Assembly (NCBI RefSeq): GCF_004010195.1
Contig: NC_057726.1
Span: forward strand, 69,302,608-69,366,607
Direction: 5' to 3'
DNA from: Chiloscyllium plagiosum
Lineage: Eukaryota
DNA: 64,000 nt
Shown here: positions 607 to 51,995 of the stretch, in pieces
How the letters are laid out: each line of letters starts with the position of its first letter
Position numbering within the stretch: the stretch's first letter is position 1
Notes under the pieces: generated by a model
Seen by the model: only the letters and a program-made list of their open reading frames with translations
Database searches by the model: none
Told to the model about the DNA's origin: nothing
Program-made: the position numbers and the translations under genes

Positions 607-699
607 ATTCCAATGATAACATTTACCCAAAGATTTTCGGTTGTTTGGGAGGTGGATTGATATTATTCCTCATCGTGATGTACACACTCAGGCGAATTG
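607..699 (+). CDS. Gene A transmembrane exon (IgSF inhibitory-type receptor; ectodomain exons lie upstream of the window)
   Basis: cacag|AT...ATTG|gtaaga; 93 nt, phase 1-1; xSNDNIYPKIFGCLGGGLILFLIVMYTLRRIG, an uncharged hydrophobic core followed by RR; parallels the gene B TM exon. Confidence 0.85.
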
Positions 700-1457
700 G
701 TAAGAATCAGATTCTATAAACGCTACCGAGTATTGAGGACTACTTCAGATGCAATGTCCTGCTGAGTAACTGTCAAATGGCGCCTATGTACCCTGCCCCA
801 ACGGTGTCTTCAATTTGATGCCACTGTATCAATTATTGATATCTCCAACTGGGGGGGGGGGACACTCAGATGAAAACATAGAACATAGAACAACAGAGTA
901 CAGGAACAGGCCCTTCAGCCTGCCAAGTCTGTGCCGATGATGATAATGCCATTGCAAACGAATCCCGAATGCCTGCACGTGATTGGTATCCCTTTATTGT
1001 CTGGGTGATAGAACATAAAGGGGCACAAAACCACCAAAAATGGGTCCTGGTATGACTAGCAGTCGAATTACTTGCTTGCTCTCCAGCAGGATTGGATTGC
1101 TGCTTGAACTAAAAGTTCAGTATTCCGCCCAACGCCACCCTTCCCTCCGTTATCTCTCAATGCGGGATTGCAGCGGCGTTAACCTCTGTCAGCATGATTC
1201 ATGTTTTACACTGAATGCAACAATGGTTTCAAATTTTAACCTGTTAATTGAGTCAGATTATATCCAATCTACATCATGAGATTTATTCTTAACCCAGATG
1301 CTTGTAATTTACCAGAATGGATGAATAATTTTACGTAGACTTCTTAATTATTCTTTGGCCATTCAGAGGAAATACCGCTGTGATATTGGTTGTAACATTT
1401 TAATATGTAATTGCAATAGAATTAAAGTACTTGTTGATTGATTTATATCTCATTTAG

Positions 1458-1501
1458 GAACATGCAGAAAACCAGAAGAGTGTAATCAGCACAATGAGCA
1501 G
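1458..1501 (+). CDS. Gene A cytoplasmic linker exon
   Basis: catttag|GA...GAGCAG|gtaggt; 44 nt, phase 1-0; GTCRKPEECNQHNEQ; same length, phase and GAGCAG end as the gene B exon at 49196-49239. Confidence 0.85.
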
Positions 1502-2739: not shown

Positions 2740-2850
2740 ACTAGGTGTACAAAAACTAATGAGGAATTAACATACGCCACTCTAGGTTTCGCTAACCCCA
2801 GGGAAACTAAGAAGTCTCGACCTTCAGATGAGACCATGGTGTATGCGCAG
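2740..2850 (+). CDS. Gene A cytoplasmic ITIM exon 1 (read-through would stop at 2880)
   Basis: ttcttccag|ACT...GCGCAG|gtaaag; 111 nt, phase 0-0; TRCTKTNEELTYATLGFANPRETKKSRPSDETMVYAQ; canonical ITIM LTYATL. Confidence 0.85.
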
Positions 2851-4352
2851 GTAAAGAGAACATGTGCCAATCTAAAATAAATAGAGGAAGGGGAAACATT
2901 CGAGGTAAACACAGGCCTGGGAGCATCTGCGCAGAGGAAGAATTCGTGTATCATAGCAGTGACATTTTTATCAGAAAATAGAATCGAAATGTGAGTTTGT
3001 TTTTGTTCCAGCGAAACTGAAGGGATAGGAAGTATAAATGCAACATCCGGAATTGAAAAAGATTAAACAACAAAGTGTTTCATGATTCAAAGCCAGAAAC
3101 AATTGTAATCTGAATATTAAAGAATCAATAAAGGGAAGCAGATCAGGTGTAAAATCTGCACAGTCGTCATCTGAATGCTGCTTGAAGGTGTAACCAATGA
3201 AATAAGACCAAATTGACTCAGACAAAAGAAAACGAACTAAACAAACGATGTATTCAGAACAAAATTTAGGCATAGGTGTTGCTCCAAGGCTCTTGAGGTA
3301 GTACAGTGTACTGAGTTCTGACAGCTATAGAACATGAAATCAATCCTATTCCTCGAACTGGCACTGAACACCATTGCAATGCTGCAGTGACCTATGGGTA
3401 AAGCAGTCAGGGTGAGATTGGAGAAGAGAATTAAGTGACAAAGCACATGATAGTGAATGTGGGCTGACCAGGGGTGTTTTATTGTCCACTTGAAATGAAG
3501 CCATCTTTAAAACGCAACTCCAATTTCGTAAATTTTAAACAAATACTCGGAGTAGAACTTTTAAGACCTTCGATTTTTAAAAAAAGTAGGAGAAAACAGG
3601 ACAAATGCTTTACCCGCTTTGGAAAGGTTTCACAGGCAAATGAGGAAATGTCAGGTTTGACTGAAAAGTGGACCAGGGTGACGTGGAGGAAATAGCCCTT
3701 CTGTGGAATGTTAACAGTGGAGAGTCGAGGGAGATTGTGTGTAGTGGTGTCATTACACGGTAGCTGCAGGGAAAGACAGAGGAGCATTCAAATGATGGAG
3801 TAAAATACAAGGACAGCGGTGAGCAAGTCATACCGGCGGGAAGGTGGGAAAAGGGTGAAAAATAACGTTATGAAGTAGATCAGATTTAATGGCGACTCAT
3901 TGAACTACAGTCGGATAGCATACTCTTCCAGAGAAAGGAATACAGATCAGAAGCATATACATGCGAGTTACAAGCTGGGTCTAACGAATGATAAACTCAT
4001 AAGGTCTTACATTCTATGCGGTTTCCCGCATGCCTCAGACACCCTGAGCAGCGCGTAAAGTTGCATGGAGGCATACAAAGGGCTTTGAAAACGTGGCCAA
4101 ATACAGACATACATAGAGACTTGAAGAAGGACTTGAAATTTGATATTAGAACATGGTTTATATTGTGACATTCAGAAAAGAAGTGACAGCGATTTGATTA
4201 GAGCTGAACACAGAGCGAGGTGACCGGCAGCAGAAAGTGGAGTCGGCCCCTCGGCCCATTTGGATTCTGGATGTTGCAGAATGGTTAACGACGATGAATA
4301 AGGAATGTACGAGGGCGTTGTAAGACACACCAAGCTTGATAAACCATGTTAA

Positions 4353-6980
4353 AAATCACACAACACCAGGTTATAGTCCAACAGGTTTAATTGGAAGCAC
4401 ACTAGCTTTCAGAGTATCGCTCCTTCATCAGGTGGTAGTGGAGTGCTCAATCCTAACACACAGAATTTATAGCAAAAATTTACAGTGTGGTGTAACTGAA
4501 ATTATACGTTGAAAAATTGATTGCCTGTTAAGCCTTTCACCTGTTAGAATATCATGGTAGTTTCACTTCTTTCATGTGTAAGTCACAAAACCTTTTTTAA
4601 AAAAGTTGCATTCTCAGGCACAAAACCTTTTTTAAAAAAGTTGCATTCTCAGGTTAGCTGTTAACAATGGCGATAACTAGACCATATGTCGAAGGTGTTA
4701 GCCCCCTGTGTTCTCTGTCGATGCCGTGAGGTTTAGATTGATTCTAATCTAAAAAGTGAGATAACGGCGTTTTACATGAATGCATGCAGTTTTTGAGTAA
4801 AGTACGATGTAACCCTGAAAGTACAAATTCACCCCACAAAATATATGTGTGCATGTCTGTGTGTCTGTCTGTTTGGGTTGGGGGTTGTGAGTGTGAGAAA
4901 GTGTGTGTATATGTGTAGTGAGTGCAGAGTGTCTTAAGTCTGTGAGGGAGTGCATGAGCGTGTGTGCCTGGAACGGTGAGTGTGGGTGTCTGTGTGCTCG
5001 TCTGTGTAAATGTGTGTCCGTGTGTATGTGTGTATAGAAGTGCCTGTGTGTGTGTGTGTGTGTATATAGTGCAATGGTCATCACCTGTAATGTGACATGA
5101 ACTCAAGGTCCCGGTTGAAGCCCTCCCTACGGGTACCGAAATTAGCTATCAGCCTCTGCTTGGCCACTTGTCACTGGTGCCTGTCCCGGAAGTCTGCCTT
5201 GAAGGATGGTCACCTGAATGTCCGAGGTTGACTGTCCTGGACCGCTGAAGTGTTCCCCAACTGGGAGGGCACCCTCCTGTCTGTTGATTGTTGTGTGGTG
5301 CCCATTCATCCATTGCTGTAACCTTTGCTTGGTTTCCCCGATGTACCATGCCTATGGGCATCCTTGCCTGCAACGTATAAGATTGAGAACATTGGCTGAG
5401 TCACATGAGTACCTGCCATATACAAGGTGGGAGGTGTCCCCACGCGTAATGGTGGTATCTATGTCTACACTCTGACACTTCGTGCAGCGCCTACCATGAC
5501 AGGGTTGTATGGAGCTGCCCTGAGAGTCGGGCAGCTTGCTACGAACAACAATCTGTTTGAGGTTTGGCGGTTGTTTAAAGGCAAGTAGTGGAGGTGTGTG
5601 GAAGGTCTTGGTGAGGTGCACATCCTCATTGATAATGTGTTGCAGGTCACAAAGAACATAGCGTAGTTTCTCACCAAGACCTTCCCCACACCCCCACTAC
5701 TTTCCTTTAAACAACCGCCAAACCTCATCAGATCGTTGTTCGTAGCGAGCTGCCCGGCTCTCAGGACAACTCCATACAACCCTGTCACAGTAGGCACTGC
5801 AAGACGTGTCAGAGTGTGGACATGGATACTGCCATTATGCATGGGGACACTTCTTACCATGTATATGGCAGGTACTCATGTGACTCAGCCAACGTTGTCT
5901 ATCTTATACATTGCAGGCAAGGATGCCCGGATGCATGGCACATTGGGGAAACCGAGCAAAGGCTATGACAACGGATGAATTGGCACCACACAACAATCAA
6001 CAGACAGGGGTGTTCCCTCCCAGTTGAGGAACACTTTAGTGGTCCAGGACATTCGACCTCGGACCTTTGGGTGACCATCCTCCAAGGTGGACTTCGGGAC
6101 AGGCACCAGCAACAAATGGCTGAGCAGAGGCTGATAGCGAAGTTCGGTACCCACAGGGAGGGCTTCAACCGGGACCTTGGGTTCATGTCGCATTACAGGT
6201 GACCACTATTGCACTATGCAAACACACACAGATACTCCTATACACACCCATTCTCACACACACAGGTACTCCTATACATACATACACACGGACACACATA
6301 TACACAGACGCGAACACAGACACCCACACACACCCTTACAGACACACACACTCCCAAACTCACACATGCACCCCCTCATAGACTTAAGACACTCTGCACT
6401 CACGACACACACACACACTTTCTCACATTCACAACCCCCAACACAGCCAGACAAAGACCTAAATGCACATATATTTTGTGGAGTGAATTTGTACTTTCAG
6501 GGTTACATTGTACTTTAGTCAAAAACTGCATGCATTCATGTCGAACTCTTAGCTCAAAAACTGCATGAATTCATGCAAAACTCCATTTTCTCACTTTTTA
6601 GATTAGAATCAATCTAAACCACATGGTATGGACAGAGAACACAGGGGGCTAACACCTTCGACATATTGTCTAGCTATCACCATTGCTAACAGCTAACGTG
6701 AGAATGCAACTTAAAAAAAAAGGTTTTGTGACTGACACATGAAAGAAGTGAAACTATCATGATATACTAACAGATGAATTTTTCAATGTATAATTTCAGT
6801 TACATCACACTGTAAATTTTTGCTGTAAATTGTGTGTGTTAGGATTGAGCCCTCCACTACCACCTGATGAAGGAACGATGCCCCGAAAGCTAGTGTGCTT
6901 TCAATTAAACCTGTTGGACTATAACCTGGTGTTGTGTGATTTTTACCTTTATACACCCCAGTCCAACACTGCCATCTCTA
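4353..6980. mobile_element. Penelope-like retroelement: two degenerate 3' copies (GIY-YIG region plus 3' end) in inverted orientation, within a gene A intron
   Basis: 4353-5615 is the reverse complement of ~5670-6940. Translations PPLLAFKQPPNLKQIVVRSKLP...PCHGRRCTKCQ...YSCDSANV and LPVEEHFSGPGHS...EQRLIAKFGTHREGFNRD match the PLE linker and GIY-YIG C-terminus; frameshifted. Confidence 0.85.
4584..4653. repeat. 35-bp perfect tandem duplication inside the left Penelope arm
   Basis: cacaaaaccttttttaaaaaagttgcattctcagg x2. Confidence 0.9.
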
Positions 6981-7765: not shown

Positions 7766-7873
7766 ACGAAACACGAAGTGACAGGGAACATGATATATGT
7801 TGACTTGGATTTGTCGAGTTCGGGGAGAACTGGGAGAACGCCCCAGAAGGAAACAAATGCAGTTTATGCGCAG
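7766..7873 (+). CDS. Gene A cytoplasmic tyrosine-motif exon 2, paralog of 2740-2850 (read-through would stop at 7903)
   Basis: tttacag|ACG...GCGCAG|gtacgg; 108 nt, phase 0-0; TKHEVTGNMIYVDLDLSSSGRTGRTPQKETNAVYAQ; same Y-Y spacing and identical TATGCGCAG|GTA end. Confidence 0.8.
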
Positions 7874-8499
7874 GTACGGCTGATATTTGTAAAATCGAAT
7901 TAAAGGAAATTAACACTTAATTAAAATTAACACAATGCAAATTGACATTTCACATTTGATTATATTAAAACGCATTTTTAAAAGTCCTAATAATGCAATC
8001 GTAAAATAGCATGATGTCATTTCAAACAGTCATTGTAAATAAGAACACTCAAGGCGATAGCTTTATTTTCACTCGTGGAATGTTTGTGGCGAGATACATT
8101 AAGTCCAAAGCTTTTAGATCAAGTGTTGCTGCATACATTCCAAATGGCGTGGAGAGATAATGAAACACATAGAAGGGACAGTTCCCTTCAGGATATTTTG
8201 GATTCACGGGTTTTAGAAGGAAAATAACAACGGAAGAATATAGTTTTACACAAAAACTGCAGGTACGTTTGCACTTCGAGTAAAGAATTTCCCCGAAATT
8301 TTGCCCTGGTCTTTATTGTAAAGAGAGCCGAACGTGCCCGACGTTCTACAGTACACCCACAACCCGTGTAAACACAGCAAGAGTTCCTTAAACTTCGACA
8401 ATTCCATAATAAAAAAAATAAGTTTCTGAACTGAACAGTTCCATTTCGAAGATTGAAAGTAACCGCAAATCATGTGCAGAACTCAACAGAAAGGTTAAA

Positions 8500-9173: not shown

Positions 9174-9245
9174 ATCAAACGAGGGCAATCTGACAATGGA
9201 GCTGTGTACACCGATTCATCTATCCCCGGCAGTCATACAACCTAA
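9174..9245 (+). CDS. Gene A terminal coding exon
   Basis: ttctgtgtttcag|ATC...ACC TAA; IKRGQSDNGAVYTDSSIPGSHTT*; the first Ile completes VYAQ|I; AATAAA at 9612-9617. Confidence 0.7.
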   Translation: MKRGQSDNGAVYTDSSIPGSHTT

Positions 9246-9819: not shown

Positions 9820-9990
9820 TGGCAAACTTATGGCAACACATGCACCAATCAGTGATCACATGTCAACCAATCAGCACTCTATTTTCGTCCTGAATCAATG
9901 TTGATTTTCGCCTTGAAATGAGATTTTGCAAATTGTTCTGATGAGTGCAAGATGAAAACCTTTGACAGAATGTGTCTTTTTTTTCTTTAT
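9820..9990 (+). mobile_element. Short PLE-like repeat with a degenerate hammerhead core
   Basis: Two CCAATCAG motifs, then CTGATGAgtgcaagatGAAA at 9938-9957. Confidence 0.4.
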
Positions 9991-18520: not shown

Positions 18521-20154
18521 ATGACTGTTTCAGTTGAAAGGGAATAGACCCAGGCGACAGTATCTGAGGGAAGAAATTCATCCACAGTTTTGCAAAATTA
18601 CGACAGAATGATGTGAGGAAGATAACAGCTTAATATTGATAAGAAACATAAACACCTCTGTGATACAATCTGTGCTTCTATCTGCTAAGTGTATTTGTAT
18701 TTGCCCAGTGTAGTGGCTTCTTTTCACCACTGCATACACTGGACTTTTTTCTTGGTATTTAGGTTTCGATGATGCACCGTAGTCATTGAAGGTAAGCTAG
18801 CCTGCTTTATGTCATGCTCTGTTTTGTCTGAAAAACAGCATTGAGACTGATTTACCATTCATTTGAATCATTCTAGATGAAAATTACACAAATCTATTTT
18901 TGACATTTTCTTGAAATCAACTCATTCTAATGAATGAACACATTATTTATACATGTGAGCTGAAATGTACCTCTGTACATAATGCGATTTCTTCCAGTTT
19001 TTTGGCATGATGCCATCCTCAGAACCTACTAGGTTAAGAGCAGAGTATGTCAGCTTATCCTCAGGCATCTCTTGCTATTTCTAGAAAATCAAGATTTAAC
19101 ATTCATTTGGTTATTTCATTTTGGAGTCAAGAGACAAGCATACATTCTTAACGCAGGCAATTTGTTTCTTGTAGTGACTTTGCTAACACTTCATTACAAT
19201 TATGATACTTTACAGTTCCTCACTCTGAACTGTTTGTTGCCAGGAACATCACATCGAATCACAATAAGCAAACCTTATTGTTTCACTATTATTAATATTA
19301 ATATAGTTTTAATTCAAAGTTTCCAGAAAAATGCTGCAATTATGCAGTGTTCTGAAGAAAAGGTTTCGTGCATCAGTTCAATTTAATTACGTTTTTGAAT
19401 TCTGATGGGTGACTTGCTGTTTTATTACATTCTGCTACAGATTGAGTATACAGTACAGTTTATTAAATGAGGCAAAAATAAACGTGTTTGCGTTTGCTTA
19501 ATAACTATAAAAAAGAATCACAGGTCGCACTGCTTCAACATAAAATTACAAGTGGCAAATACTTGAAATGAGTTAGTAAAGTCTTTCATTCGGAGGGTAT
19601 ATGATGCAGTATTTAATTGAAAATTCCCTCAAATTAAATCAGTAAATCAGTTTGAGAAAAGGACAAACTGTACTTACAACTGCTAATAGAAAATTAGTTT
19701 CAGAACCACCCTGTTCCCTTATGAATAATGGAAGGTATTCTATTCTATTTCAGTAGGCCATCTAAATAAAGGCATTGAAGTCTTAATTGAAGATGAAGTT
19801 GCAATGTATTTTCAAAGAATTTGCAAGGAACTCTTGATGCCAGATAGCATGTCTTAAAGTAAATTATTGATGTTTTAAGTTAGAATATGTACCATTTATT
19901 TAGGGAGGTACATGTTCAGCTTAGTGACAATGAAGAAATGTAACAAAGACAGTGTGATTTTGCTTAAAATGTAAACCACAATATTTCAGTGCTCTAAAAT
20001 GTGCCTTTTGGTCTTCTGTGAGGTATTTCTCAATCATAGATATTTTCTCTTTTGATCCGATCCACTGCTCGTGAAACAATGAAACACAGATTAAGCATTG
20101 CATCTGGCTATGAGAGGATTTTATTCTATTACCTATAACAGTGCAGCTTCAATA

Positions 20155-24784: not shown

Positions 24785-24956
24785 AATCCAAAGATGTACA
24801 GGTCAGGTGAATTGGCCATGCTAAATTGCCCATAGTGTTAGGTAATGGGTAAATGTAGGGGTGTGGGTGGGTTGCGCTTTGGCGGGTCGGTGTGGACTTG
24901 TTGGGCCGAAGGGCCTGTTTCCACACTGTAATGTAATCTAATCTAATCTAATCTAA
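24785..24956 (+). mobile_element. 5'-truncated HE1 SINE abutting the broken end of the gene C V exon
   Basis: gatgtacaggtcaggtgaattggccatgc...(tctaa)n tail. Confidence 0.85.
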
Positions 24957-25218
24957 TGTTCCAGTATCCTGGACAGTTACATTCAGAAGATTAAGGCAGG
25001 CTACTCGTTTAATGACATGGAAGAACTTGCTGCTACCCTCCTGCAGAAAGGATTTGTTACCTTCTCTCCGCCAGTAAGCAATAACATTTGAATCGTCGAT
25101 TTTGAGGGAGAAAAGACAAAGCAAGAAAACTGTTGAACCTCTCTGCGCTGTTAATCATTTCAGATCTGGGTTCACTTTGGCCAAAATACTCACAGCAGCT
25201 ATCAACCAAGGAAACACA
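24957..25218 (-). pseudogene. Gene C (pseudogene) V-domain exon, truncated before YYC
   Basis: Minus: ...AAVSILAKVNPDLK*LTAQRGSTVFLLCLFSLKIDDSNVIAYWRREGNKSFLQEGSSKFFHVIKRVACLNLLNVTVQDTGT; B-strand Cys, YW and L-x-NV-x-x-QDTG align with the gene B V domain; in-frame TGA; cut by a SINE. Confidence 0.85.
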
Positions 25219-32970: not shown

Positions 32971-32979
32971 GATATAATC

Positions 32980-42512: not shown

Positions 42513-42557
42513 TGCAATGTGCGATATTCCCTTGAATAGCTATGTGTACTTTGATTG

Positions 42558-42722: not shown

Positions 42723-42777
42723 ATGTTAGCACTTGATCTGTTGAATTACCTTTCGACATTAGGCATTATTTACATAG
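42723..42777 (+). CDS. Gene B leader exon
   Basis: gcaacATG...ATA G|gtatat; MLALDLLNYLSTLGIIYI(A); phase 1; 180-nt intron. Confidence 0.75.
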
Positions 42778-45700
42778 GTATATGCATTTAAGACTTTCAG
42801 ATCAGTAGAAGTGGAATAAGAACTGTGTGACGATCGCTGATACTTAATGTTTATTGTAGTTTCCGCTTTAGTTACATTATACAATAACGGTTTTATTTCT
42901 ATTTAATGCTCCTGAATTATCTCTGTTGATAATCTCTTTTGTGCTCATTTCTGACAGCCTCAGACACTGTGACCCCTTTCTCCTTGCATCAGGTCCCACA
43001 GCGTGTGACCGGAGTGAAAGGCGAAAACATTTCCATTAATTGCTCTGCGTCTTTATTCATGCCGAATGCAATGTTGGATGTTTATTGGTGGAAGAAAGGG
43101 CAACGCTCGACTTTTAGTATGACGAGAGAGAAAACGAAAATAGCGATGCCTTTTCACCAAGGATCTTCCGAGTTCCGCCTGATCAATGTGAGTTTCCAAG
43201 ATTCTGGGGTTTATTACTGCGGCGTTAAAAAAGGGCCAGGAATGATGTCTAATGGCACTGGGACTGAGGTCACAATATACGGTGAGTGATACTGAGGAGC
43301 TAAAGGGCTCTTTGAAATTAATCAGCGAATACCAGTGAATAAGCAAATGAAAATTTCTCTCAGTGCCCATCTGTCATTGTATTTGCAGCGAATGCTTTCT
43401 GGTGAAATAGCCGCATTTATTGCAGGAGTGTTCACATTTGAATGCCAGACTCAACCAATAATTTCTTTCTGAGGGATTATATTTTTGAAGCACCCCTTTT
43501 TAATGATTTTTTAGGCTGAGTAATGTTGGCATTGGCACTATTGGTTGCTTACCATTTAGAGAGTTTTCTTCTTCCCATTTCCCAATGCCTTCTTCCAACA
43601 TGATTGAAATTTTAATCCTACAGCAATAAACAATATGTAATATATTTCTAAGACATAATGGTGCCTGACTTGAAAGGGGTTGGAGGTCCTGGTCTACTCA
43701 TGAGGATGTAGTCCTTTTGTTTCCAAGTTACAGTACTTATATGGTGGTTGATGCTAAAGGCTAGGGACTCTAGTGGTGCAGCTGTAGTATCCTTACCTTT
43801 GTGACAGGCTATGACTTTCCAGCATCTGCAGTCATTACTATCTCCTTTGAGCCATTTAGCTTTGGTTCAAGTCCCACCTGTTCCAGAGGTATATAATAAC
43901 ATTCGAGTGCAAGGAGGAGAAAATGACGACTACAGATGCTGGAGATCAGAGTCGAGAGTGAAAGAAAAACAGGTCAGGCAGCATTTGCTCGCTCGGAGAA
44001 AGTTTCAGGCATAAGCCCTTCTTCAGGAATTCTGCCTGAAACGTCGATTATCATGCTTCTTGGATGCTGCCTGACCTGCTGCACTTTTCCAGCAACACAT
44101 TTTTCAGCATCTGCTCGCTCCACAATATCCCAATACAAGTTGATTAGGAAATATCTTGATGCACAAGCCACCTTGGTGAGTGGAGGCTCATTACTACCTC
44201 ACAGCGCTGGGGACCTGGGTTTGATTCCCGTGTTGACTGGCCGTCTGTATGGAAATTTCACATTCTACGTGTGCCTGTGTGGGTTGCCTCCAGGTACTCT
44301 GGTTGCCTCCCACAGTCCAAACATGGTGCAGGTTAGGTGAATTGGCTGTGCTGAATTGCCCACAGTGTCCAGGGATGTGCTAGGTGCTTTGGCTTTGGTT
44401 AATGCTGGGTTATCTGGATGGAATGCTCTTTGGAGAGTTGGTGTGTACTCGATGAGCTGAACAGCCTGCTTCCATACTGTCGGGATTCCATGGTGGCATG
44501 GATATTGCAGTTGGTGCAGACACGTGTAAAATTTGAAGGGTATGGCTGTTTAACATGGTGTGTGGAATGTAATTTTGTAAATTATGTTTTTTTTCCATGA
44601 AATCCAGTCCAGAATTGTTGCAACTAATTCCCCAAGACAATTAGAGAGCTTTCTATTAGATTCCTGGTTTGTAGGTAACGGAGAGAGTTTGACGAGATAA
44701 CAGTTCACCACTTGCTGCAGAATACTCCTGCTGCATTAATGTCAGCAACTGTGTGACAATCAATATTGGGCCTGAAGAAGGGCCTGTGCCCGAAACGTCG
44801 AATCTCCTGTTCCCTGGATGCTGCCTGACCTGCTGTGCTGTTCCAGCAATAAAGTTTCAACTTTGATCTCCAGCATCTGCAGACCTCACTTTCTCCTTTG
44901 TACCGGTGATACCCTCTCTTATTAGCAGTGCTACACCCCCTCCTATTTTTCAAGACAGTAACATTCTCATAAACAAACCCTTTGGTAATAAGGTAGATTC
45001 AAACACAGACTCTTACAGGCAGGACTCCAATCCAGGAGGGAAATGCAACAAGAGAGATTTCAGACCAAGGCAGTTCGCAATCATTTACTGAAGCTTGCAA
45101 CTCCGATGTCGTGTGACTGCCACAGCTAAAAAAAAGAACTAGAACCTGAACTGGGAGAACTGGACACTCCCTTTCCAGTGTTAAACTGTCTTGAAAAAAT
45201 ACTGATTCAGGCTGGCTCCCTAGCCGCTTCGGCACTTCTACCTTTATAACCTCTCTTCAAACAAAAACCCAGAAGAAAATAAGCTTTTTAAAGTGACAGC
45301 ATTGTCACAACAGTGATGATAGATTTATGGATGTTTGTTTGGTCTTCGTGACATTGAGTTCCTGACATAAATTCCTGCAGTGAGGGTTGAAATGTTACAT
45401 GGGCAGGTTCTGTTTAATTGGGTCATAAGTTAGGGACAGTGTAGGCACAAGCTTTTCCCTCATCGGGTTTAGGTAAAAAAAAATAAAGAAATATGGTATG
45501 ATCAGATTTAAATAATTTAATTAGGAGAACGTGAGGACTGCAGATGCTGGAGGTCAGAGTCAAAAAGTGTGGCGCTGGAAAAGCACAGCAGGTTAGGCAG
45601 CATCCGAGGAGCAGGAGAATCGATGTTCCGGGCATAAGCCCTTCATCATCCAGTGCCACACTTTTTGACTTCAAACACTTCAAGCTAAAAAATCACACAA

Positions 45701-48700
45701 CACCAGGTTATAATCCAACAGGTTTATTTGGAAGCACTAGCTTTCGAAGCATTGCTCCTTCATTAGGTGGTTGTGGGGTATAAGATCCTAAGACACAGAA
45801 TTGACGCAGACACTTCAAGCTATTTATGGTGATTGAAACTCCAACTCTGAAATGATTTGCCTTCCAGGCATGTAATCTTGCTTCTGTTGTCTTTGGTATG
45901 GCATGAAACGTGTTTTCAACTTATTTCCTTTGGCTTATTCACAGTGCCTCCAACTCCAATAACGATTACTCGACTGTCCTCTCCATTCCTTAAACTTCTC
46001 TGTACGACAGCTAGCTTCTTCCCAGAAGAATTTAACCTTACCTGGTATGAAAATGACAGAAAAATTACATCTGGAATAAATACTACAAAGTTTCAGGAAA
46101 AGGAGGGATTACATCAAGTTTCCAGCTCCTTATATCCTGTGGAGATCGGGTTGGTTTATACTTGCCAAGTTTCTCATGTTTCACTAGTGGACCCAGCCAA
46201 TGACAGCTACTTGGTTTCAGATCAGGGTAAGAGTCTCAGCTTCTTCATATTTCCCTGAACTATAATTTGTTAGATTTAAGGGGGCAATATCAGCACTCTA
46301 ATTTCTGTTGCAGATTATTGGAGACAGAGTAACTACATGATTGACAAGAGATTGACTTCAAGTTTTTTTTAAAAAATCATTGGATAGCATGGAAGGAAGC
46401 CACTTTGTTTATTTTGCATTGTCATGTTCTTTGTCATGCTATTCTATTTGGCCCACGCATCCATTTCATCGCAATAAATTCTCCCTTTAGGTTTTATTCC
46501 AATTCTTTTTCAAATGTGATCATTGAAACATCTTTCCTGCTTTTAGAAACAAAAGATTCTGAATTATAACACATTATATAAGTACAGCTGCCCCCATTCC
46601 CTTGCCAAACGTTGCCTGTTTGTGTGCCAATTACTCTAAATACACACCCTTTGATAACCAACCATTCCACCACTCTTTTTCTTTACTGTATTTAAATATT
46701 GATTTTAAACTACTATATCAATTTGTCTTAATCATTGCAGCACCATGAAGAACAGTGCTGGCTTCTCCACTGATTTTACAGAATGAAAATCCCTTGTGTC
46801 ACTCTGTTCGTATGTTCGTATGTGCATATGCACGCCTATGTACTATGAGGATATTCTGTTTTGGCAACCTATTCAGATTCTATAATTTAGTCATGCTTAA
46901 TCCCACTCCAATCTCCATTATTCTTCAGAATCAAATGAATCCCTTTAATTTAAAATTCTATTCACCAAGTCTCTTGCATTTTCTCAACATGTCTGTGTTT
47001 TGAATATCCCATAATAAGTACAAAGAGGCTATATATATATATATATATATATATATGCCAAGCCACATCATTCATATGTATCTCTAACAATGCTCCTCAT
47101 ACAGAGAAATGTCTCTGATGGCTCTCCAACCAAAAGAAAAACAACTGCCTGAGTCCTTCTCTAGCATACAGATGCATGAAGAGAGACAGGCAGAAGTGTT
47201 GAGGTATATTAAGCCCCCGCATATATTCACAAAATCAGCATGAACAAATCTTACATGCATATAACATAAACATTAATAAAGTTAAACATGATAATTATGC
47301 TGAACAAAATGCTAAAATGATCAGAAAATTGAATTGTGTGTTCTTTAATCCAAGTTTGCTCAGTTAATACTGTCATAGAACCTCTGGATAAATGGAGAGT
47401 TTATTAGATTGGTGAGAGGCGATGGGTTTGATGTGTCAGTGTGGCCTGTTATCTGTTGTTGCTTATTATTTAGCATCATTTGCTCTTTAAATGCTAATGT
47501 TCACATTCTCTGTCATCTTTAGGTAAAAAAGGAAATGGTTTCTCCTATGCCTTAGCATTCAGCTGGATAGCAGGGGGCTTTATAATTTTGGTTCTAGCAA
47601 TTGTTGTCAGGCTGTACAAACTAGAGAGATCTCATGGTAAGACTGATTTAAAATTGTCTTTTAACATTAAGTGTACTGCAATGGTGCGGAAGTAGAGGGG
47701 TAGGTTATGACATCAACAGGCCACTGTAATGAGATAGTTTACCACACTGATAGGGCTCATCAGGATAACTTCAACAAACCATAACTGAATTGTAAGATTT
47801 TTATGTGATAAATGACAATGAGAAATAGAATGTGTATGTTAAATATGTTTGATGCTGGATTGAATAAAGAAGACGCAGCAACCATGAATCAGAAAAACAA
47901 ATTAGTAAAACAAGACAGAAATATTTCAGCTACTCAACTGATCAGACAACATCAATGGAGATAAAAGCAGGGGTAATACTTCAGGATATGAACATAGGAG
48001 GTATGATTAGTAAATTGCAGATGACACCAAAATTGGAGGTGTGGTGGACAGTGAAGAAGGTTACCTCAGAGTACGACGGAATCTTGATCAGATGGGCCAA
48101 TAGATCAAGGTGTGATAGATGAAGTTAAATTTAGATAATTGTGAGCTGCTGCACATTGGAAAAGCAAATCAGGCAGGTCTATACATTTAATGCTAAATTC
48201 CTGGGGAGTGTCGTTGAACAAAGAGACCTTGGAGTGCAGGTTCATAGTTCCTTGAAAGTGGAGTTGCAGGTCGATAGTATGGTGAAGAAGGTGTTTTATA
48301 TGCTTGCCTTTCACGTCAGAGCATTGAGTATAGGAGTTGGGAAGTTATGTTGCAGCTCTGTGGGACATTGGTTAGGCCATTTTTGGAATAGAGTGTGCAG
48401 TTTTGATCTCCCTGCTATAGTAAGGACAGCCTGAAATTTGAAAGCGTTCAGAAAAGATTTACAAGGATTTTGCTAGGGATGGAGGCTTTGAGCTCTCGGG
48501 AGAGGCTGAATACACTGGGACAAATTTCCCTGGAGTATCAGAAGCTGAGGGCCTTACAGTAGTTTATAAAATGATGAGGGGCTCACAAACAAGATTTTTT
48601 CCCAAGGGTTCGGGAGTCCAAAGCAAGCTGGCATTGTTCTAAGGTGAGAGGTGAAAGATTTAAAAGGGACCTAAGGAGCACGTTTTAATGCAGAGAGTGG

Positions 48701-51700
48701 TGCATGTATGGAATGTGCTGCCGGAGGAGGTGGAACAGTTGCACCATTTAAAAGGCATTTGGATGGGTATATGAATAGAAAGGGTTTGGAGGTGTATGGG
48801 CCAAATACTGGAAAATGGAACTAAGTATTTAGGATATCTCGTCAGCATGGAAGACTTGGACTGAAGGGTCTGTTTCTGTGCTGTATATCTTTTGGACACT
48901 ATGATTGTATGACACATTTTTAGAACATTAACTCTGTTTTCATTTCCACAAATAATGTCTGACCTGCTAAATATTTCCAGGAATTTCTGTCTTTATGTAA
49001 TACTTCCAGCATTTACTGTATTTTACTTTTGCGAAAAGTAAAATTGATCACATCTCAACCAGCGGTAGAATTGGGTATTAATTTTTTATTGGTGATTATG
49101 CTGCTCATACTGCTCAAATTTTGGGTTTTATCTTTTTTCACAGACATACCTGACATTTTGAAATTCATTATTGGTGTACATTTGTTCTGTGGCAGGTGAT
49201 GCAGTTGCTGAAGAAATTGACAGCCGGGTTGAGGAGCAGGTCAGTTTGGTCTGTTTTTATAAAACCCAGGCGACTTTTGCAGTGCACTTGATGCTTTCAC
49301 CTGTCGTAGGTATATCTATTTTCCTGGTAGGTCAGAAAATCACCAACTAATTGTGGAAAATGTGCCAAACAGAATTCATTCATGTAACCCTCAGAATCCT
49401 GAGGGAATATTATAAATCCCATTGTTTCCAATGCTCATTCGGCATTTATCTAAATTCTTTACAAGGCATAGTCTGCTTGTTTTTGTAATAAGAATGATAA
49501 TCCCACCTGTTAATATCTGAACGGCTGCTGAGTGTTGACTGCTGCTGCTCTGTATCAGGGATTTGACTGATACAGATTAGTTCAGATCTTTAGCAGAAAA
49601 ATGCATCTTCAAAATTAAGCAAACTCAGAACTTGAATATCCAATAACCAGTAAGTGGACATGCGCCACTCCTTACCTCATCTGGTCAGGATGCGGAATGT
49701 AACTGTGAATTAGAATTAGCATTCAGATAAATGACATCAGCTCAAAGTTAGTGGTCGCAACTGTCCTCAGTAGAAAGTTATTGATTGGCCAATGTCATTT
49801 AAGGAGCAAAAACAGATATTACTGGAAAAATTCAGCAGGTTTGGCAGCATCTGTGGAGAGGAAACAGAGTTAATGTTTTGGGTTGAATGCCCCTCCTTTG
49901 GAACTTTTCAGAACTTGTTCAGAAGGGTCACTGGACCTGAAACATTAACTTTTTTTTGCTACAGATGCTTCCAGGCAAGGATCAGGCAGGACTTTGGAGA
50001 GTTACAAGTGGCCAGGAAGGAACTGTACATAGATTCCTGAACGTTGCAACCCAGGTTGATAGGATTGTTAAGGAAGCAAACGGTGTCTGAGCTTTTATTG
50101 GTAGAGGGATTGAGTTTCAGAGCCAGAAGGTCATGTTGCAGCTGTTCAAAACTCTGGTGCCTCTGCACTTGGGGTATTGCATATAGTTCTCGTTATAGGA
50201 AGGCTGTGAAAGCTTTGGAATGGATTCAGAGGTGATTTATTATGATGTTGCCTGGTATGGAAGGAAGGTCTTATGAGGAAAGGCTGAGGCACTTGAGGCT
50301 ATTTTCATTCAAGAGAAGAAGACTTTGAGGGACTTAATTGAGATGTATAAGATAATCGGAGGGTTAGATAGGGTGGACAGTGAGAGCCTTTTTCCTCGGA
50401 TGGTGATGGCTAGCATGAGGGTACATAGCTTTAAATAGAGAGGTGATCAATATAGGACAGATGTCAGAGGTAGTTTCTTTACTCAGAGTAGTAGGGGCAT
50501 GGAATGCCCTGTTTACCATTGTAGTAGACTCGCCGATTTGAAGGGCATTTAAAAGGTCATTGGATATACATATGGATGAAAATGGAATAGTGTAAGGTAG
50601 ATAGGCTTCAAGGATGTGGGTTTGCTCGCTGAGCTGGAATGTTCAGTTTCAGATGTTTCATCACCATACTAGGTAACTTTTTAAGTGAGCCTCCAGATGA
50701 AGCATTGGTGTTGTAGCCCGCTTTCTATTTATATGTTTGGGTTTCCTTGGATTGGTGATGTCATTTCCTGTGGTGACATCATTTCCTATGGTTATGTCAT
50801 TTCCTGTTCTTTTTCTCAGGGGTTGGTAAATGGGATCCAAGTCAATGTGTTTGTTGATAGAGTTACTGTTGGAATGCCATGCTTCTTGGAATTTTTGTGT
50901 GTGTCACTGTTGGCTTGTTCTTGGATGGATGTGTTGCCCCTGTCAAAGTGGTGTCCTTCCTCATCCGTATGTGAGAGTGTGTCGTGTCTTTTTGTGGCTA
51001 GTTGATATTCACGTATCCTGTGGCTAGTTTTCTGCCTGTTTGTCCAATGTCATATTTATTACAGTTCTTGCAAGATATTTTGTAAATAACATTAGTTTTT
51101 CTTATTGTCTGTATCGGGTTTTTCTAGTTCATGAGCTGCTGGTTTAGTGTGTTGGTAGGTTTGTGGACAACCATGATACCAAGAGGTCTGCGTAGTTTGG
51201 CAGTCATTTCTGAGATGTCTTTGATGTAGGGAAGACATAGGGAAGACCATATACAGACTTTTCTCATTGAAGCGAAGAAGAATGAGAGATGACTCGATAG
51301 AGGTGTTCAAGATGATGAGAGGCACAGATAGAGTGAATAGTCAAAGACTTTTCACTAGGGCAGAAACGGCTATCACAAGAGGGCATAATTTTAAGGTGAT
51401 TGGAGGCCGGTTTAGAAGAGATGACAGAGGTGGGTCCTTTACACAGAATGATTGGTGCGTGGAATGCACTGCCAGGGGTGCTACTAGAGTCAGATACAGT
51501 AGGGACATTTAAGCGACTAATGGAAATGCACATGGATAATAGTAATATGAAAGGTGTGCAGGTTAGTTTGATAAAAGAATAGGATAAAAGGTCAGCACAA
51601 CATCAAGGACCATAGGGCTGTACTGTGCTGTACTGTTCTATGTTCCATGCTGCAAAACCTGCTGAGTTTTTCTCACAATTTCTATTTTTGTTTCTGATTT

Positions 51701-51995
51701 CTAGCATCAGCAGTTCATTTAATGCCATTCAAGGCTCTGTGTGCTGTATTTGCTGACCCCAAATATGTTTTTTTGTTGATGTTTACCTGAACCAATTTTG
51801 CTTTTGTTTCAATTTGGTAAGTAACTGATATTCCTCACAAATTCTCCACAGGTCATCCATAAAGGAAAAGTGGAGGGTCCAACTTATGCTGATCTCCACT
51901 TCAATGAACACAGGAAAATGTGGAAACCCAGAAGTGAAAAAGAGGCTGTTGTTTATACAAACATAAATTACCATTCTGTCCAGGACCAACTCTGA
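42723..51995 (+). CDS. Gene B: complete 320-aa type-I IgSF receptor, leader-V(J-like)-C1-TM-ITIM (SIRP-like / antigen-receptor-like); join(42723-42777,42958-43281,45945-46226,47523-47636,49196-49239,51852-51995)
   Basis: All introns GT-AG; phases 1,1,1,1,0 are consistent; 963 nt open to TGA. Confidence 0.9.
42958..43281 (+). CDS. Gene B V-set Ig exon with a J-like G strand
   Basis: ctgacag|CC...TAC G|gtgagt; GENISINC...VYWWK...LINVSFQDSGVYYC...NGTGTEVTIY. Confidence 0.95.
43917..44112. mobile_element. PLE-derived palindrome (gene B intron 2)
   Basis: Inverted arms of the gatgctggagatcagag / ctgcctgacctgctg family. Confidence 0.75.
44165..44490 (+). mobile_element. HE1 V-SINE (old)
   Basis: cctcccacagtccaaacatggtgcaggttaggtgaattggc. 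Confidence 0.8.
44770..44897 (+). mobile_element. Single-arm PLE-derived element with a hammerhead-like core at 44772-44799
   Basis: CTGAAGA-A-GGGC-ctgt-GCCC-GAAACGTC. Confidence 0.75.
45522..45809. mobile_element. Two adjacent PLE-derived elements; the second (45688-45809) has a 13-bp TSD
   Basis: acacttcaagcta at 45675-45687 and 45810-45822; the second matches the 4353 Penelope terminus. Confidence 0.75.
45945..46226 (+). CDS. Gene B C1-set Ig exon
   Basis: ttattcacag|TG...CAG G|gtaaga; LLCTTASFFPEEFNLTW...YTCQVSHVSL. Confidence 0.95.
47030..47056. repeat. (TA)n microsatellite
   Basis: tatatata... run. Confidence 0.95.
47523..47636 (+). CDS. Gene B transmembrane exon
   Basis: tcatctttag|GT...CAT G|gtaaga; GKKGNGFSYALAFSWIAGGFIILVLAIVVRLYKLERSH; no charged residue in the hydrophobic core. 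Confidence 0.9.
47988..48900 (+). mobile_element. CR1 LINE 3' region
   Basis: ADDTKIGGVVDSEEG...; LGSVVEQRDLGVQVHSSLKV. Confidence 0.9.
49196..49239 (+). CDS. Gene B cytoplasmic linker exon
   Basis: ggcag|GT...GAGCAG|gtcagt; 44 nt; GDAVAEEIDSRVEEQ. Confidence 0.85.
50040..50610 (+). mobile_element. CR1 LINE 3' region
   Basis: Typical CR1 ORF2 end (tatgaggaaaggctgagg..., tggaatgccctg). Confidence 0.85.
50612..51240 (-). mobile_element. Second Penelope-like family (GIY-YIG 3' part plus degenerate hammerhead)
   Basis: Minus translation IGQTGRKLATG...LATKRHDTLS; a matching piece lies at ~11140-11238. Confidence 0.7.
51262..51650 (+). mobile_element. CR1 LINE 3' end
   Basis: KRRRMRDDSIEVFKMMRGTDRVNSQRLF. 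Confidence 0.85.
51852..51995 (+). CDS. Gene B ITIM exon with stop codon
   Basis: ctccacag|GTC...CTC TGA; VIHKGKVEGPTYADLHFNEHRKMWKPRSEKEAVVYTNINYHSVQDQL*. Confidence 0.88.
   Translation, partial: VIHKGKVEGPTYADLHFNEHRKMWKPRSEKEAVVYTNINYHSVQDQL

What the first reader, a model, noticed from the sequence alone, without database searches (positions are those of the whole stretch)
607..51995. A shark multigene cluster of non-rearranging V(J)-C1-TM-ITIM receptors (SIRP-like / antigen-receptor-like inhibitory family)
Seen in sequence: gene B is a complete 320-aa leader-V-C1-TM-cyto protein. Gene A shares its TM exon phase, the 44-nt phase 1-0 linker exon ending GAGCAG, and a two-tyrosine cytoplasmic exon. 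Gene C is an inverted dead paralog. The copies are highly diverged in protein sequence but keep the same exon architecture. Established knowledge: C1-set domains are restricted mainly to Ig/TCR, MHC, tapasin and SIRP-type proteins, and V(J-like)+C1 with ITIMs is the SIRP-alpha plan, though mammalian SIRPa has V-C1-C1. Inference: this is an old birth-and-death family of shark inhibitory leukocyte receptors with a light-chain/TCR-like V-C1 ectodomain encoded in the germline, relevant to antigen-receptor origins and probably not functionally described.
Basis: partly seen in the sequence, partly recalled or inferred. Interest (0 to 1): 0.85.

Follow-up and report, generated by a model that had tools for sequence, protein, structure and literature searches.

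The report
Shark V-C1 inhibitory receptor gene cluster
The window holds one intact gene, the tail end of a second and a dead third copy of a large, old family of shark, ray and chimaera surface receptors, built like one antibody chain with an inhibitory tail; the genes are in public predictions under misleading names and seem never to have been studied.

Summary
Gene B (42723-51995, +) has six exons: leader, V with a J-like strand, one C1, TM, a 44-nt linker and a tyrosine-motif tail. Each exon translation occurs unchanged, in order, in the 320-aa RefSeq protein XP_043563318 of Chiloscyllium plagiosum, named 'tapasin-related protein-like'. Gene A's TM, 44-nt linker and tail exons are as described, but two further tail exons probably follow (to 9245). 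Gene C is dead: an in-frame stop, a repeat cutting its V exon, and no C1 exon.

The family is large and occurs in sharks, rays and Callorhinchus (19 species named). One 58-hit search shows at least nine different automatic names. 42 of 101 family-like proteins have a TM segment plus a canonical ITIM or ITSM. Gene B sits in a fully supported clade with several paralogs per species and ray members.

It has the SIRP and PRARP plan, but membership in SIRP, NKp30, UrIg, B7 or tapasin was not shown. Splicing evidence is thin: one contig. Inhibitory function and leukocyte expression are inferred.

Eight literature searches found no description, but key papers were not held. The scan noted similar genes elsewhere in this genome.

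The parts
607..699 (+). Gene A transmembrane exon (phase 1-1); its V and C1 exons lie upstream of the window
   Evidence: Acceptor ag and donor gtaaga read. 49% identical to the TM region of Heptranchias family protein P0046. Family profile E 0.044.
1458..1501 (+). Gene A 44-nt linker exon (phase 1-0), ending GAGCAG|gt
   Evidence: Same length, phases and end as gene B's linker. The family consensus has EEQ at this place.
2740..2880 (+). Gene A tail exon 1 with the canonical ITIM LTYATL. Either spliced at the CAG|gtaaag donor after 2856, or read through to the stop at 2878-2880.
   Evidence: Family profile E 9.3e-06. Four family proteins hit it.
7766..7875 (+). Probable gene A tail exon 2 (MIYVDL ... 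AVYAQ|gtacgg)
   Evidence: Family profile E 8.2e-06. Eight family proteins hit it.
9174..9245 (+). Candidate last exon of gene A (strong acceptor, 23 codons, stop)
   Evidence: Read. There is no homology support (searched a mis-framed translation of this exon; two searches gave no hit), so it rests on splice-site reading alone.
18674..19074 (-). Gene C tail-like remnants: 19074-18973 with LTYSAL and 18796-18674 with PVYAVV
   Evidence: Weak only: tblastn E 0.013 to 0.8 and family profile E 0.22-0.23.
24846..24956 (.). Interspersed repeat that truncates gene C's V exon before its YxC and J-like strand
   Evidence: The 23-base core has 6 copies in the window, against 0 in 100 shuffles.
24957..25199 (-). 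Gene C V-exon remnant with an in-frame TGA at 25157-25155
   Evidence: 67% identical over 81 aa to P0158 at E 8e-28. The family profile matches positions 35-102 only, E 2.9e-14.
42723..42777 (+). Gene B leader exon (split leader, phase 1)
   Evidence: Its translation is residues 1-18 of P0207.
42958..43281 (+). Gene B V exon with a contiguous J-like strand (GTGTEVTI); it is not split, so no rearrangement is needed
   Evidence: Pfam V-set E 8.1e-12. Family profile E 9.2e-42. Found in P0207 from residue 20.
45945..46226 (+). Gene B C1 exon (LLCTT..FFP..W...YTCQVSH)
   Evidence: Pfam C1-set E 6.3e-10 against C2-set_2 at 0.0022. Family profile E 3.2e-44. An X2 contig lies inside the exon.
47523..47636 (+). 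Gene B transmembrane exon with no charged residue in the helix; skipped in RefSeq isoform X3
   Evidence: A 163-letter contig of run X2 lies on 47522-47635 and runs on 4 and 45 letters beyond it. P0177 lacks this exon.
49196..49239 (+). Gene B 44-nt linker exon, ending GAGCAG|gt
   Evidence: X2 depth of 0.65 in bin 49100-49299 equals 44 letters at that contig's depth of 2.9.
51852..51995 (+). Gene B tail exon: PTYADL (Pro at -2, not canonical), then overlapping canonical ITIMs VVYTNI and INYHSV, then a stop
   Evidence: Motifs counted. 100% identical to the end of P0177.

Best explanation
The window lies in a cluster of a chondrichthyan multigene family of non-rearranging, type I membrane receptors.

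What the window holds:
- Gene B is intact. In RefSeq it is Chiloscyllium plagiosum 'tapasin-related protein-like', 320 aa. That name is an artefact of automatic naming.
- Gene A is seen only from its TM exon onward.
- Gene C is a dead remnant on the other strand.

Shown: each protein has a split leader, a V domain whose J-like strand is encoded in the same exon, one C1-set domain, an uncharged TM helix, a short acidic linker exon ending EEQ or NEQ, and a tail of one or more exons carrying YxxL/V/I motifs.

Inferred mechanism:
1. The V domain binds an unknown cell-surface or pathogen ligand.
2. Src-family kinases phosphorylate the tail tyrosines.
3. SH2 phosphatases (SHP-1, SHP-2) or SHIP dock on the ITIMs and damp activation of the cell.

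Also inferred: the TM-less isoform X3 would be a secreted decoy. Short-tailed relatives elsewhere in the genome may be activating partners, as in other paired receptor families. Frequent duplication, divergence (faster in V than in C1) and gene death keep the repertoire changing.
For: Anatomy:
- Splice sites and phases were read.
- All six exon translations are found in order in P0207.
- RefSeq isoforms exist with (X1, X2) and without (X3) the TM exon.

Domains:
- V-set E 8.1e-12 and C1-set E 6.3e-10.
- The C1 exon's best solved-structure matches are UrIg2, Ig constant domains and MHC class II beta.

Family:
- phmmer of the C1 exon against 1.84 billion representatives gave 413 hits at E<=0.001, many 40-65% identical over the whole domain at residues ~120-220 of 200-450-aa proteins.
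- 51 of 58 profile hits are chondrichthyan at E<=4.3e-33; the other 7 are at E>=5e-18.
- 42 of 101 family-like proteins have a TM segment plus at least one canonical ITIM or ITSM.
- Gene B has two canonical ITIMs and gene A has one.

Age and turnover:
- In the careful tree of 46 ectodomains, gene B is in a 15-row clade (100/100) with six shark species, two Mobula species, and 3 rows each from C. plagiosum, Heterodontus and Heptranchias (for Heterodontus and Heptranchias some rows may be isoforms of one gene).
- Gene C is dead.
- V is less conserved than C1 in 4 of 4 relatives: 51/67, 52/65, 46/60 and 38/52%.

Transcription (run X2):
- The 4 bins holding the C1, TM, linker and tail-start exons are the only low, non-zero bins.
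- 11 of 11 other repeat-free bins are empty.
- One contig covers the TM exon exactly and runs on by 45 letters, which equals 1 letter plus the 44-nt linker.
Against: - No direct evidence of protein, surface expression, ligand, phosphorylation or phosphatase binding.
- The tissue is unknown.
- Run X2 is only guessed to be RNA and carries another species label. Its exon joints were not among the 15 listed, so splicing is inferred from piece ends and bin depths.
- Runs X1, X8 and X9 of the window's own species label gave no exon cover. Only about 2% of X8 and about 6% of X9 were read, and X9 laid nothing at all, so it is no test.
- Gene B's first motif, PTYADL, has Pro at -2. Its two canonical ITIMs overlap (VVYTNINYHSV), so both cannot be bound at once.
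- Three of gene A's four tail tyrosine motifs are not canonical.
- 43 of 101 family-like models show no TM segment by my crude test. Many of these are partial models.
Confidence: 0.7

Rival explanations
1. These are the cartilaginous-fish orthologs or co-orthologs of SIRP (signal-regulatory proteins). They would then be an already characterised family that lost or never gained the second C1.
For: - 13 of the 51 chondrichthyan hits are named 'tyrosine-protein phosphatase non-receptor type substrate 1-like'.
- The family profile matches SIRP-alpha 2wng over V and C1 (profile 26-215, chain 5-205) at E 7.7e-30.
- Among the ten unnamed hits that I looked up, the non-chondrichthyan ones with a family name are lungfish and coelacanth 'SIRP-like' proteins.
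- Gene B's F-G region (YYCGVKKG...NGTGTEV) resembles that of coelacanth SIRP-like P0098 (YYCVKLKG...GNGSDLSV).
- Amblyraja P0038 has V-C1-C1.
Against: - Gene B and most members have one C1.
- No SIRP chain is among the 60 best matches to the V-only profile.
- Ig and UrIg2 chains score as high or higher with the whole and the C1-only profiles.
- The lungfish hits are 25-26% identical, and their scores are sums over three C1 domains.
- Automatic names for the family disagree: nine kinds.
Confidence: 0.15
2. This is the shark 'NCR3 (NKp30) family' already described in nurse shark (Kinlein et al. 2021, eight divergent subtypes; abstract recalled, paper not held). In that case it is already known.
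For: - NKp30 chains are among the best single-domain matches to the V-only profile (6yjp E 4.5e-8).
- They are the best single-domain matches to P0197, a V-only isoform that RefSeq names NCR3-like (E 6.7e-6).
- The profile scores P0197 at E 4.3e-33.
- Some RefSeq isoforms skip C1 and give V-TM proteins (P0187, P0196).
Against: - NKp30 has no C domain and has a charged TM. Gene B has a C1 and an uncharged TM.
- VNAR and CD79b score above NKp30.
- Gene B's own V does not list NKp30 among its 60 best matches.
- No Ginglymostoma protein is among the 58 profile hits.
- Unchecked notes of this scan place V-only NCR3-like genes, one next to AIF1, on other pieces of this genome.
Confidence: 0.2
3. The genes encode B7/butyrophilin-type ligands (B7H6-like or CD276-like) rather than receptors.
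For: - Six hits are named NCR3 ligand 1-like, two CD276 homolog and one butyrophilin-like.
- The family profile matches CD276 9ly5 over both domains at E 1.8e-23.
- B7 proteins also have a V-C ectodomain.
Against: - Pfam prefers C1-set (E 6.3e-10) to the CD80-like C2-set_2 (0.0022, below its cut-off).
- The V has a J-like GxGT strand.
- 42 of 101 members carry canonical ITIM or ITSM tails.
- Ig, UrIg2 and SIRP chains score higher than CD276.
Confidence: 0.07
4. Gene B is an untranscribed or decaying gene prediction, and the cluster is a graveyard of receptor relics.
For: - Gene C is dead.
- Repeats fill most of the window.
- Three runs with the window's species label showed no exon cover.
Against: - The six-exon frame is intact with canonical splice sites.
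- All invariant family residues are kept.
- X2 contigs cover exons only, with one ending exactly at exon borders.
- RefSeq lists four isoforms.
Confidence: 0.05

Closest known systems
SIRP-alpha/beta/gamma (signal-regulatory proteins)
   Same: Both have an N-terminal V domain with a J-like strand encoded in the germline, followed by C1-set domain(s), a TM segment and an ITIM tail (SIRP-alpha). Both are multigene. Short-tailed relatives of this family may be activating partners, as SIRP-beta is, but this was not tested. The family profile aligns over V and C1 of 2wng.
   Different: This family has one C1 instead of two. There is no specific V similarity. Tails are often built from repeated exons. 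The family was found here only in cartilaginous fish at high scores. CD47 binding is unknown.
PRARP genes of bony vertebrates (Fu et al. 2019; recalled, paper not held; named in a passage of PMC10751288)
   Same: As recalled, PRARPs are non-rearranging VJ + single C1 + TM proteins with tyrosine-motif tails, which is the same plan as gene B. Turtle V-C1-TM proteins with a TEYAAV tail are the best non-fish two-domain hits (P0199, E 3.7e-10). I did not establish whether those are PRARPs.
   Different: As recalled, PRARP is a linked pair of genes, not a family of dozens. Similarity to the turtle proteins is only 26-27% identity, with a long branch of 1.59 in the tree.
NKp30 / NCR3
   Same: Both have a non-rearranging VJ-type V domain. 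NKp30 is among the best single-domain structure matches to the family's V. The family's J-like strand carries a conserved NGT sequon.
   Different: NKp30 has no C domain, a charged TM and an activating function. Gene B has a C1, an uncharged TM and ITIMs.
UrIg and UrIg2 of elasmobranchs (PMC12227049: abstract, section 7 and passages read)
   Same: Both have a non-rearranging VJ exon with a split leader followed by C1-type domains. UrIg2 (9dmx) is the top solved-structure match to gene B's C1 exon and to the C1 profile.
   Different: [quoted passage not shown] The section reports UrIg2 mainly in gill and liver and UrIg mainly in liver, and mentions no ITIM tail. The UrIg2 score is a sum of three weak domain hits (12, 10 and 17 bits).
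Teleost NITRs (novel immune-type receptors; passage of PMC7916673 and search-listing abstract of PMC2442602)
   Same: Both are diversified multigene families of non-rearranging receptors with V-J continuity. Both are mostly ITIM-bearing with a minority of other forms, and both evolve by birth and death.
   Different: NITRs have one or two Ig domains (PMC2442602, search-listing abstract); that the second is not C1-set is my recollection. They occur in bony fish. No NITR appeared among the hits named here.

Membership tests
SIRP | Ectodomain of V followed by two C1-set domains | tested here: not met
   Gene B has one C1 exon between the V and TM exons. The six-frame family-profile scan finds no other. 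P0207 is V-C1-TM.
SIRP | V and C1 domains closer to SIRP than to other IgSF families | tested here: inconclusive
   SIRP-alpha ranks 4th with the whole profile (E 7.7e-30), behind Ig and UrIg2 chains. No SIRP chain is in the best 60 for the V profile. SIRP-gamma ranks 7th for the C1 profile. No tree with SIRP sequences could be built.
SIRP | ITIM-bearing tail (alpha form) | tested here: met
   VVYTNI and INYHSV in gene B; LTYATL in gene A.
SIRP | Binds CD47; recruits SHP-1/SHP-2 | not testable with these tools
   Needs binding assays.
NKp30/NCR3 | Single VJ-type V domain with no constant domain | tested here: not met
   A C1-set exon is present. Some RefSeq isoforms of relatives do skip it (P0187, P0196).
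NKp30/NCR3 | Basic residue in the TM helix for pairing with an ITAM adaptor | tested here: not met
   The hydrophobic stretch of gene B's TM exon has no charged residue before RLYK.
NKp30/NCR3 | V domain most similar to NKp30 | tested here: inconclusive
   NKp30 scores E 4.5e-8 with the V profile but ranks below VNAR and CD79b. It is absent from the best 60 for gene B's V alone.
NKp30/NCR3 | Linkage to the MHC | not testable with these tools
PRARP | VJ + one C1 + TM + tyrosine-motif tail, non-rearranging (as recalled) | tested here: met
   Architecture of gene B. This is a resemblance of plan only.
PRARP | Sequence grouping with chicken PRARP-A/B | not tested
   No PRARP sequence or paper was at hand. 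The 'PRARP' literature search returned only unrelated acronyms among the 15 of 106 papers listed.
UrIg/UrIg2 | VJ followed by several C1-type domains (nine C1-type domains in nurse shark UrIg2; several in UrIg) | tested here: not met
   Gene B has a single C1. The architecture of UrIg and UrIg2 is taken from section 7 of PMC12227049.
Rearranging Ig/TCR chains | V and J segments separate in the germline, flanked by recombination signals | tested here: not met
   V and the J-like strand are one uninterrupted exon, 42958-43281, spliced directly to C1.
B7/butyrophilin | IgV followed by a CD80-like IgC domain | tested here: not met
   C1-set E 6.3e-10, above its cut-off. C2-set_2 E 0.0022 at 18.5 bits, below its cut-off of 21.
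Tapasin/TAPBPR (the RefSeq name of gene B) | Large N-terminal tapasin-type domain before the C1 domain (as recalled) | tested here: not met
   The N-terminal domain of gene B is an ordinary V-set domain. No tapasin or TAPBPR chain is among the 60 best matches listed in any of the structure-sequence searches.

The most novel reading that the evidence does not exclude
The family is an undescribed, chondrichthyan-wide lineage of VJ-C1-TM receptors. Together with SIRP and PRARP it would descend from the same single-chain, membrane-bound, non-rearranging precursor as Ig and TCR chains. Sharks would then keep, in dozens of copies with inhibitory tails and possibly activating partners, the closest living model of what an antigen-receptor chain did before the RAG transposon split its V exon.
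Probability: 0.15. Interest if true: 0.85.

Novelty: new member of a known kind. Interest (0 to 1): 0.5.

Why it matters
Cartilaginous fish are the oldest living animals with antibodies, T-cell receptors and the MHC. Non-rearranging genes that join a V(J) domain to a C1 domain are the favoured models for the ancestor of antigen receptors; passages of PMC10751288 and section 7 of PMC12227049 argue this for UrIg, UrIg2 and NKp30.

This window shows a well-defined, intact example of a different such gene type: one V(J), one C1, a membrane anchor and inhibitory motifs. The database searches show that it belongs to a large family spread over sharks, rays and chimaeras. In public annotation that family is hidden under at least nine unrelated automatic names.

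If the family is indeed undescribed, it gives comparative immunologists three things:
- a shark counterpart of SIRP, NITR and LILR-type receptor families, possibly with paired forms;
- a new set of VJ-C1 sequences for trees of antigen-receptor origin;
- a correction to misleading names such as 'tapasin-related' and 'immunoglobulin lambda-like'.

If it turns out to be the published shark NCR3 family or a SIRP ortholog group, the finding is ordinary annotation.

Tried and rejected
Searches that gave nothing:
- Gene B's V exon alone in the search for homologous proteins found no candidate. The tool sees only proteins of 59-187 aa for this query, so the blank says little.
- The V-only protein P0197 found only itself.
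- The literature search for 'PRARP' gave only unrelated acronyms among the 15 of 106 papers listed.
- Searches on SIRP/ITIM/shark/C1-set, on cartilaginous fish/ITIM/C1 domain/multigene family, on 'NCR3 family' + shark and on VJ-C1/VJC1/V-C1 found no description of this family.
- One search (NCR3, shark, NKp30) listed reviews and the UrIg2 paper only.

Papers not held: Kinlein 2021, Flajnik 2012, Flajnik 2023 (UrIg), and Ohta and Flajnik 2015. What I say of them, and of Fu 2019, is recalled. Supplements were closed and I did not ask for them. The gene tables of PMC10751288 and PMC12227049 may list these loci.

Tools and runs that did not help:
No fold comparison was done.
- Runs X1, X8 and X9 gave no exon cover.
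- Ten other long ORFs of the window gave no Pfam family (10 of 10).
- My first tblastn used wrong frames and was repeated correctly.
- My crude TM test misfiles TM segments that hold Arg or Asp, so I make no count of 'activating' forms.

Readings considered and not adopted:
- The RefSeq name 'tapasin-related' was rejected.
- The reading as a B7-type ligand was not adopted.
- SIRP orthology is not shown.

Rows left out of the tree. I used 46 proteins whose species name I had. I dropped:
- isoforms of gene B (P0173, P0177, P0205) and its Hemiscyllium homologue P0206;
- the fused model P0158;
- models lacking C1 (P0187, P0196, P0197);
- P0070 with a foreign N-terminus;
- other named members of the same species that I took for partial or duplicate models (P0005, P0018, P0171, P0176, P0189, P0192, P0193, P0195);
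- all unnamed representatives.

Full report
WHAT IS IN THE WINDOW. The window has no N and is mostly interspersed repeats.

Gene B was read base by base. On the + strand it has:
- a leader exon at 42723-42777;
- a V exon at 42958-43281;
- a C1 exon at 45945-46226;
- a TM exon at 47523-47636;
- a 44-nt linker exon at 49196-49239, ending GAGCAG|gt;
- a tail exon at 51852-51995.

The splice sites are canonical. The phases are 1,1,1,1,0, and the sum is 960 nt, or 320 codons. Pfam calls the V exon V-set (E 8.1e-12) and the C1 exon C1-set (E 6.3e-10), with the CD80-like C2-set_2 only at 0.0022. The V exon carries the usual Cys, Trp and DSGVYYC residues and runs straight into a J-like GTGTEVTI strand. 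No rearrangement is therefore needed.

IDENTITY WITH A PUBLIC GENE MODEL. Their 90% cluster holds P0207, 320 aa, XP_043563318.1/XP_043563319.1, 'tapasin-related protein-like isoform X1'.

Each of the six exon translations occurs unchanged in P0207, at residues 1, 20, 128, 222, 260 and 274.

Isoform X3 (P0177, 282 aa) holds leader, V, C1, linker and tail but not the TM exon. X2 (P0173) has another start. I did not see what transcript evidence RefSeq used.

Two further exons probably belong to gene A:
- 7766-7875 has a good acceptor, ends ...VYAQ|gtacgg, and is hit by eight family proteins and by the family profile at E 8.2e-06.
- 9174-9245 has a strong acceptor and a stop but no homology support.

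The first tail exon also ends ...VYAQ|gtaaag at 2856, so it may be spliced there rather than read through to the stop at 2880. Relatives such as P0046 and P0060 have tails of the same repeated form.

Gene C lies on the minus strand:
- Its V remnant (25199-24957) is 67% identical over 81 aa to the first unit of the Hemiscyllium model P0158.
- It has a TGA at 25157-25155.
- It is cut after ...VQDTGT by a repeat whose 23-base core occurs 6 times in the window, against 0 in 100 shuffles.
- A family profile run over 2,406 six-frame segments finds only profile positions 35-102 of its V. It finds no C1 or TM, and two weak tail-like pieces (E 0.22-0.23) at 18677-19065.

The same scan finds no family exon elsewhere in the window. 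Ten other long ORFs had no Pfam family (10 of 10).

TRANSCRIPTS. I laid 46100-52099 with runs X1, X8 and X9 (the window's species label) and X2 (another label, guessed to be RNA).

In X2:
- 19 of 30 bins have depth.
- 15 of those are repeat bins with depths of 53 to 27,866.
- The other 4, with depths of 0.45-1.65, are exactly the bins that hold the C1, TM and linker exons and the start of the tail exon.
- The remaining 11 bins are empty, among them the bin 51900-52099 that holds the rest of the tail exon.
- One 163-letter contig lies on 47522-47635, which is the TM exon, with no mismatch. It has 4 and 45 further letters that do not continue into the introns. 45 equals one letter plus the 44-nt linker, and the linker bin's depth (0.65) equals 44 letters at that contig's depth of 2.9.

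I take this as a spliced C1-TM-linker transcript. However, the joints were not among the 15 printed, so it is an inference.

X1, X8 and X9 gave no exon cover. Only about 2% of X8 and about 6% of X9 were read, and X9 laid nothing at all, so it is no test. The leader-V and V-C1 junctions were outside the stretch laid.

THE FAMILY. phmmer of the C1 exon against 1.84 billion representatives gave 413 proteins at E<=0.001 and 107 at E<=1e-10. Many are 40-65% identical over the whole domain, at residues ~120-220 of proteins of 200-450 aa.

A profile of 21 full-length members (A1) found 58 proteins at E<=1e-5 among the 8000 candidates scored:
- 51 are chondrichthyan, all at E<=4.3e-33.
- 7 are not, all at E>=5e-18.

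The automatic names of the 51 are:
- SIRP-alpha-like: 13
- tapasin-related-like: 7
- NCR3 ligand 1-like: 6
- Ig lambda-like: 5
- MHC class I- or class II-like: 3
- CD276 homolog: 2
- butyrophilin-like: 1
- CDON-like: 1
- NCR3-like: 1
- uncharacterised: 12

Named species are eleven sharks, seven batoids and Callorhinchus milii. In every species with several hits, most or all hits lie on one long record; a few lie on short contigs.

Of the 218 proteins stored, 101 are family-like (at least 38% identity to gene B's C1 over at least 60 aa, and at most 560 aa). 42 of these have a TM segment followed by at least one canonical ITIM or ITSM. The invariant residues are the two Cys-Trp sets of the V and C1 domains, a GxG in the J-like strand, and the Pro of VPPTP at the V-C1 junction.

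AGE AND TURNOVER. A careful tree of 46 named ectodomains, rooted on two turtle V-C1 proteins, puts gene B in a 15-row clade with 100/100 support. That clade contains:
- Scyliorhinus, Hemiscyllium, Heterodontus (3 rows), Heptranchias (3 rows) and Cetorhinus;
- two Mobula rays;
- three C. plagiosum rows.

Some rows of Heterodontus and of Heptranchias may be isoforms of one gene: P0160 and P0165 are named as isoforms and differ by a branch length of 0.005.

Other clades also mix sharks, rays and the chimaera. One clade of seven shark rows has short branches and one gene per species (the two Heptranchias rows are isoforms). The tool warned of three long rows and one join of long branches.

V is less conserved than C1 in 4 of 4 relatives compared. 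Together with the dead gene C, this fits a birth-and-death pattern.

WHAT IT RESEMBLES. The searches against solved-structure sequences gave these results:
- The whole-family profile's best matches are Ig chains (5e-36), UrIg2 (7.8e-35) and SIRP-alpha over both domains (7.7e-30). SIRP-gamma (2.7e-25) and CD276 (1.8e-23) follow.
- The V-only profile (4 rows) lists shark VNAR (2.8e-9), CD79b (1.5e-8), NKp30 (4.5e-8), TCR alpha and light chains, and no SIRP among the best 60.
- The C1-only profile (11 rows) lists UrIg2, Ig lambda and mu, then SIRP-gamma and SIRP-alpha.

Among the ten unnamed hits that I looked up, the non-chondrichthyan ones that carry a family name are lungfish and coelacanth 'SIRP-like' proteins. 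The lungfish ones are 25-26% identical, with scores summed over three domains.

So the domains are true VJ-type V and C1 domains. The plan is that of SIRP-alpha with one C1, or of PRARP as I recall it. No test placed the family inside a known one.

The accessible literature treats UrIg, UrIg2, NKp30 and PRARP as the non-rearranging VJ or VJ-C1 relics. I read the abstract, section 7 and passages of PMC12227049, and passages of PMC10751288. It does not mention this family.

MECHANISM. Shown: the architecture, the motifs and the family. Inferred: ligand binding by the V domain; phosphorylation of the tail tyrosines; recruitment of SHP-1, SHP-2 or SHIP and inhibition; and a secreted form from TM skipping.

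Weak points:
- PTYADL has Pro at -2.
- The two canonical ITIMs of gene B overlap.
- Most of gene A's motifs are non-canonical.

EARLIER NOTES OF THE SCAN. These notes are unchecked. They say that:
- gene A's V and C1 lie about 7 kb before the window, and further paralogs lie 28-33 kb before it;
- similar VJ-C1-ITIM genes lie 0.25, 7.0, 7.7 and 7.8 Mb before the window on the same piece, and on other pieces;
- V-only NCR3-like genes, one next to AIF1, and MHC genes lie on other pieces.

I could not test it.

VERDICT. The gene is already predicted in RefSeq under a misleading name. I found no family-level description, but the most relevant papers were out of reach.

Noticed in passing
window 2740-9245 (+): Gene A's tail seems to be built of repeated exons, each ending ...VYAQ at the splice donor (2856 and 7875). 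The residue at +3 of that tyrosine is therefore supplied by the next exon, or by read-through. Relatives such as P0046 and P0060 have the same repeated tail units.
   Followed up: partly
proteins P0177, P0187, P0196 (RefSeq isoforms; gene B exon 47523-47636): Exon skipping gives other forms. Gene B's isoform X3 lacks the TM exon, which would give a soluble V-C1 with the tail sequence. Heterodontus and Scyliorhinus isoforms lack the C1 exon, giving V-TM-ITIM proteins that resemble NKp30 in layout.
   Followed up: partly
proteins P0006, P0024, P0047, P0181 (same chromosomes as the ITIM forms): Short-tailed relatives have a membrane segment of the form R-x-[IV]-LG ... [IV]-[VF]-DH and no tyrosine motifs. 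They may be activating or adaptor-pairing partners. My crude TM test misfiled them, so I give no count.
   Followed up: no
proteins P0179, P0188, P0184, P0178, P0186, P0180, P0114, P0174: One conserved subfamily has short branches and one gene per shark species. Its V domain is the most NKp30-like of the family. It still has a C1 domain, and in the members read it has a long basic tail (Cys-rich next to the membrane in some) without ITIMs. It could be a shark NKp30 relative that kept a C1 domain.
   Followed up: partly
protein P0158 (Hemiscyllium ocellatum) against window 24957-25199: A RefSeq model fuses an intact gene-C-type V-C1-TM unit to a second V-C1-TM-ITIM unit. In that species the counterpart of the dead gene C therefore appears intact and adjacent, on the same strand.
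   Followed up: no
window 4744-5106 (-) and 6177-6568 (+): Two His/Thr-rich ORFs with similar translations lie on opposite strands around 5100-6200. This is an inverted repeat pair, probably the arms of a mobile element.
   Followed up: no
window 43255-43263 and alignments A1/A4: The J-like strand carries an N-glycosylation sequon (NGT within NGTGT) that is conserved in most family members.
   Followed up: no
protein P0038 (Amblyraja radiata): One skate model has V followed by two nearly identical C1 domains. This is either a recent exon duplication that recreates the SIRP-like V-C1-C1 layout, or an assembly artefact.
   Followed up: no
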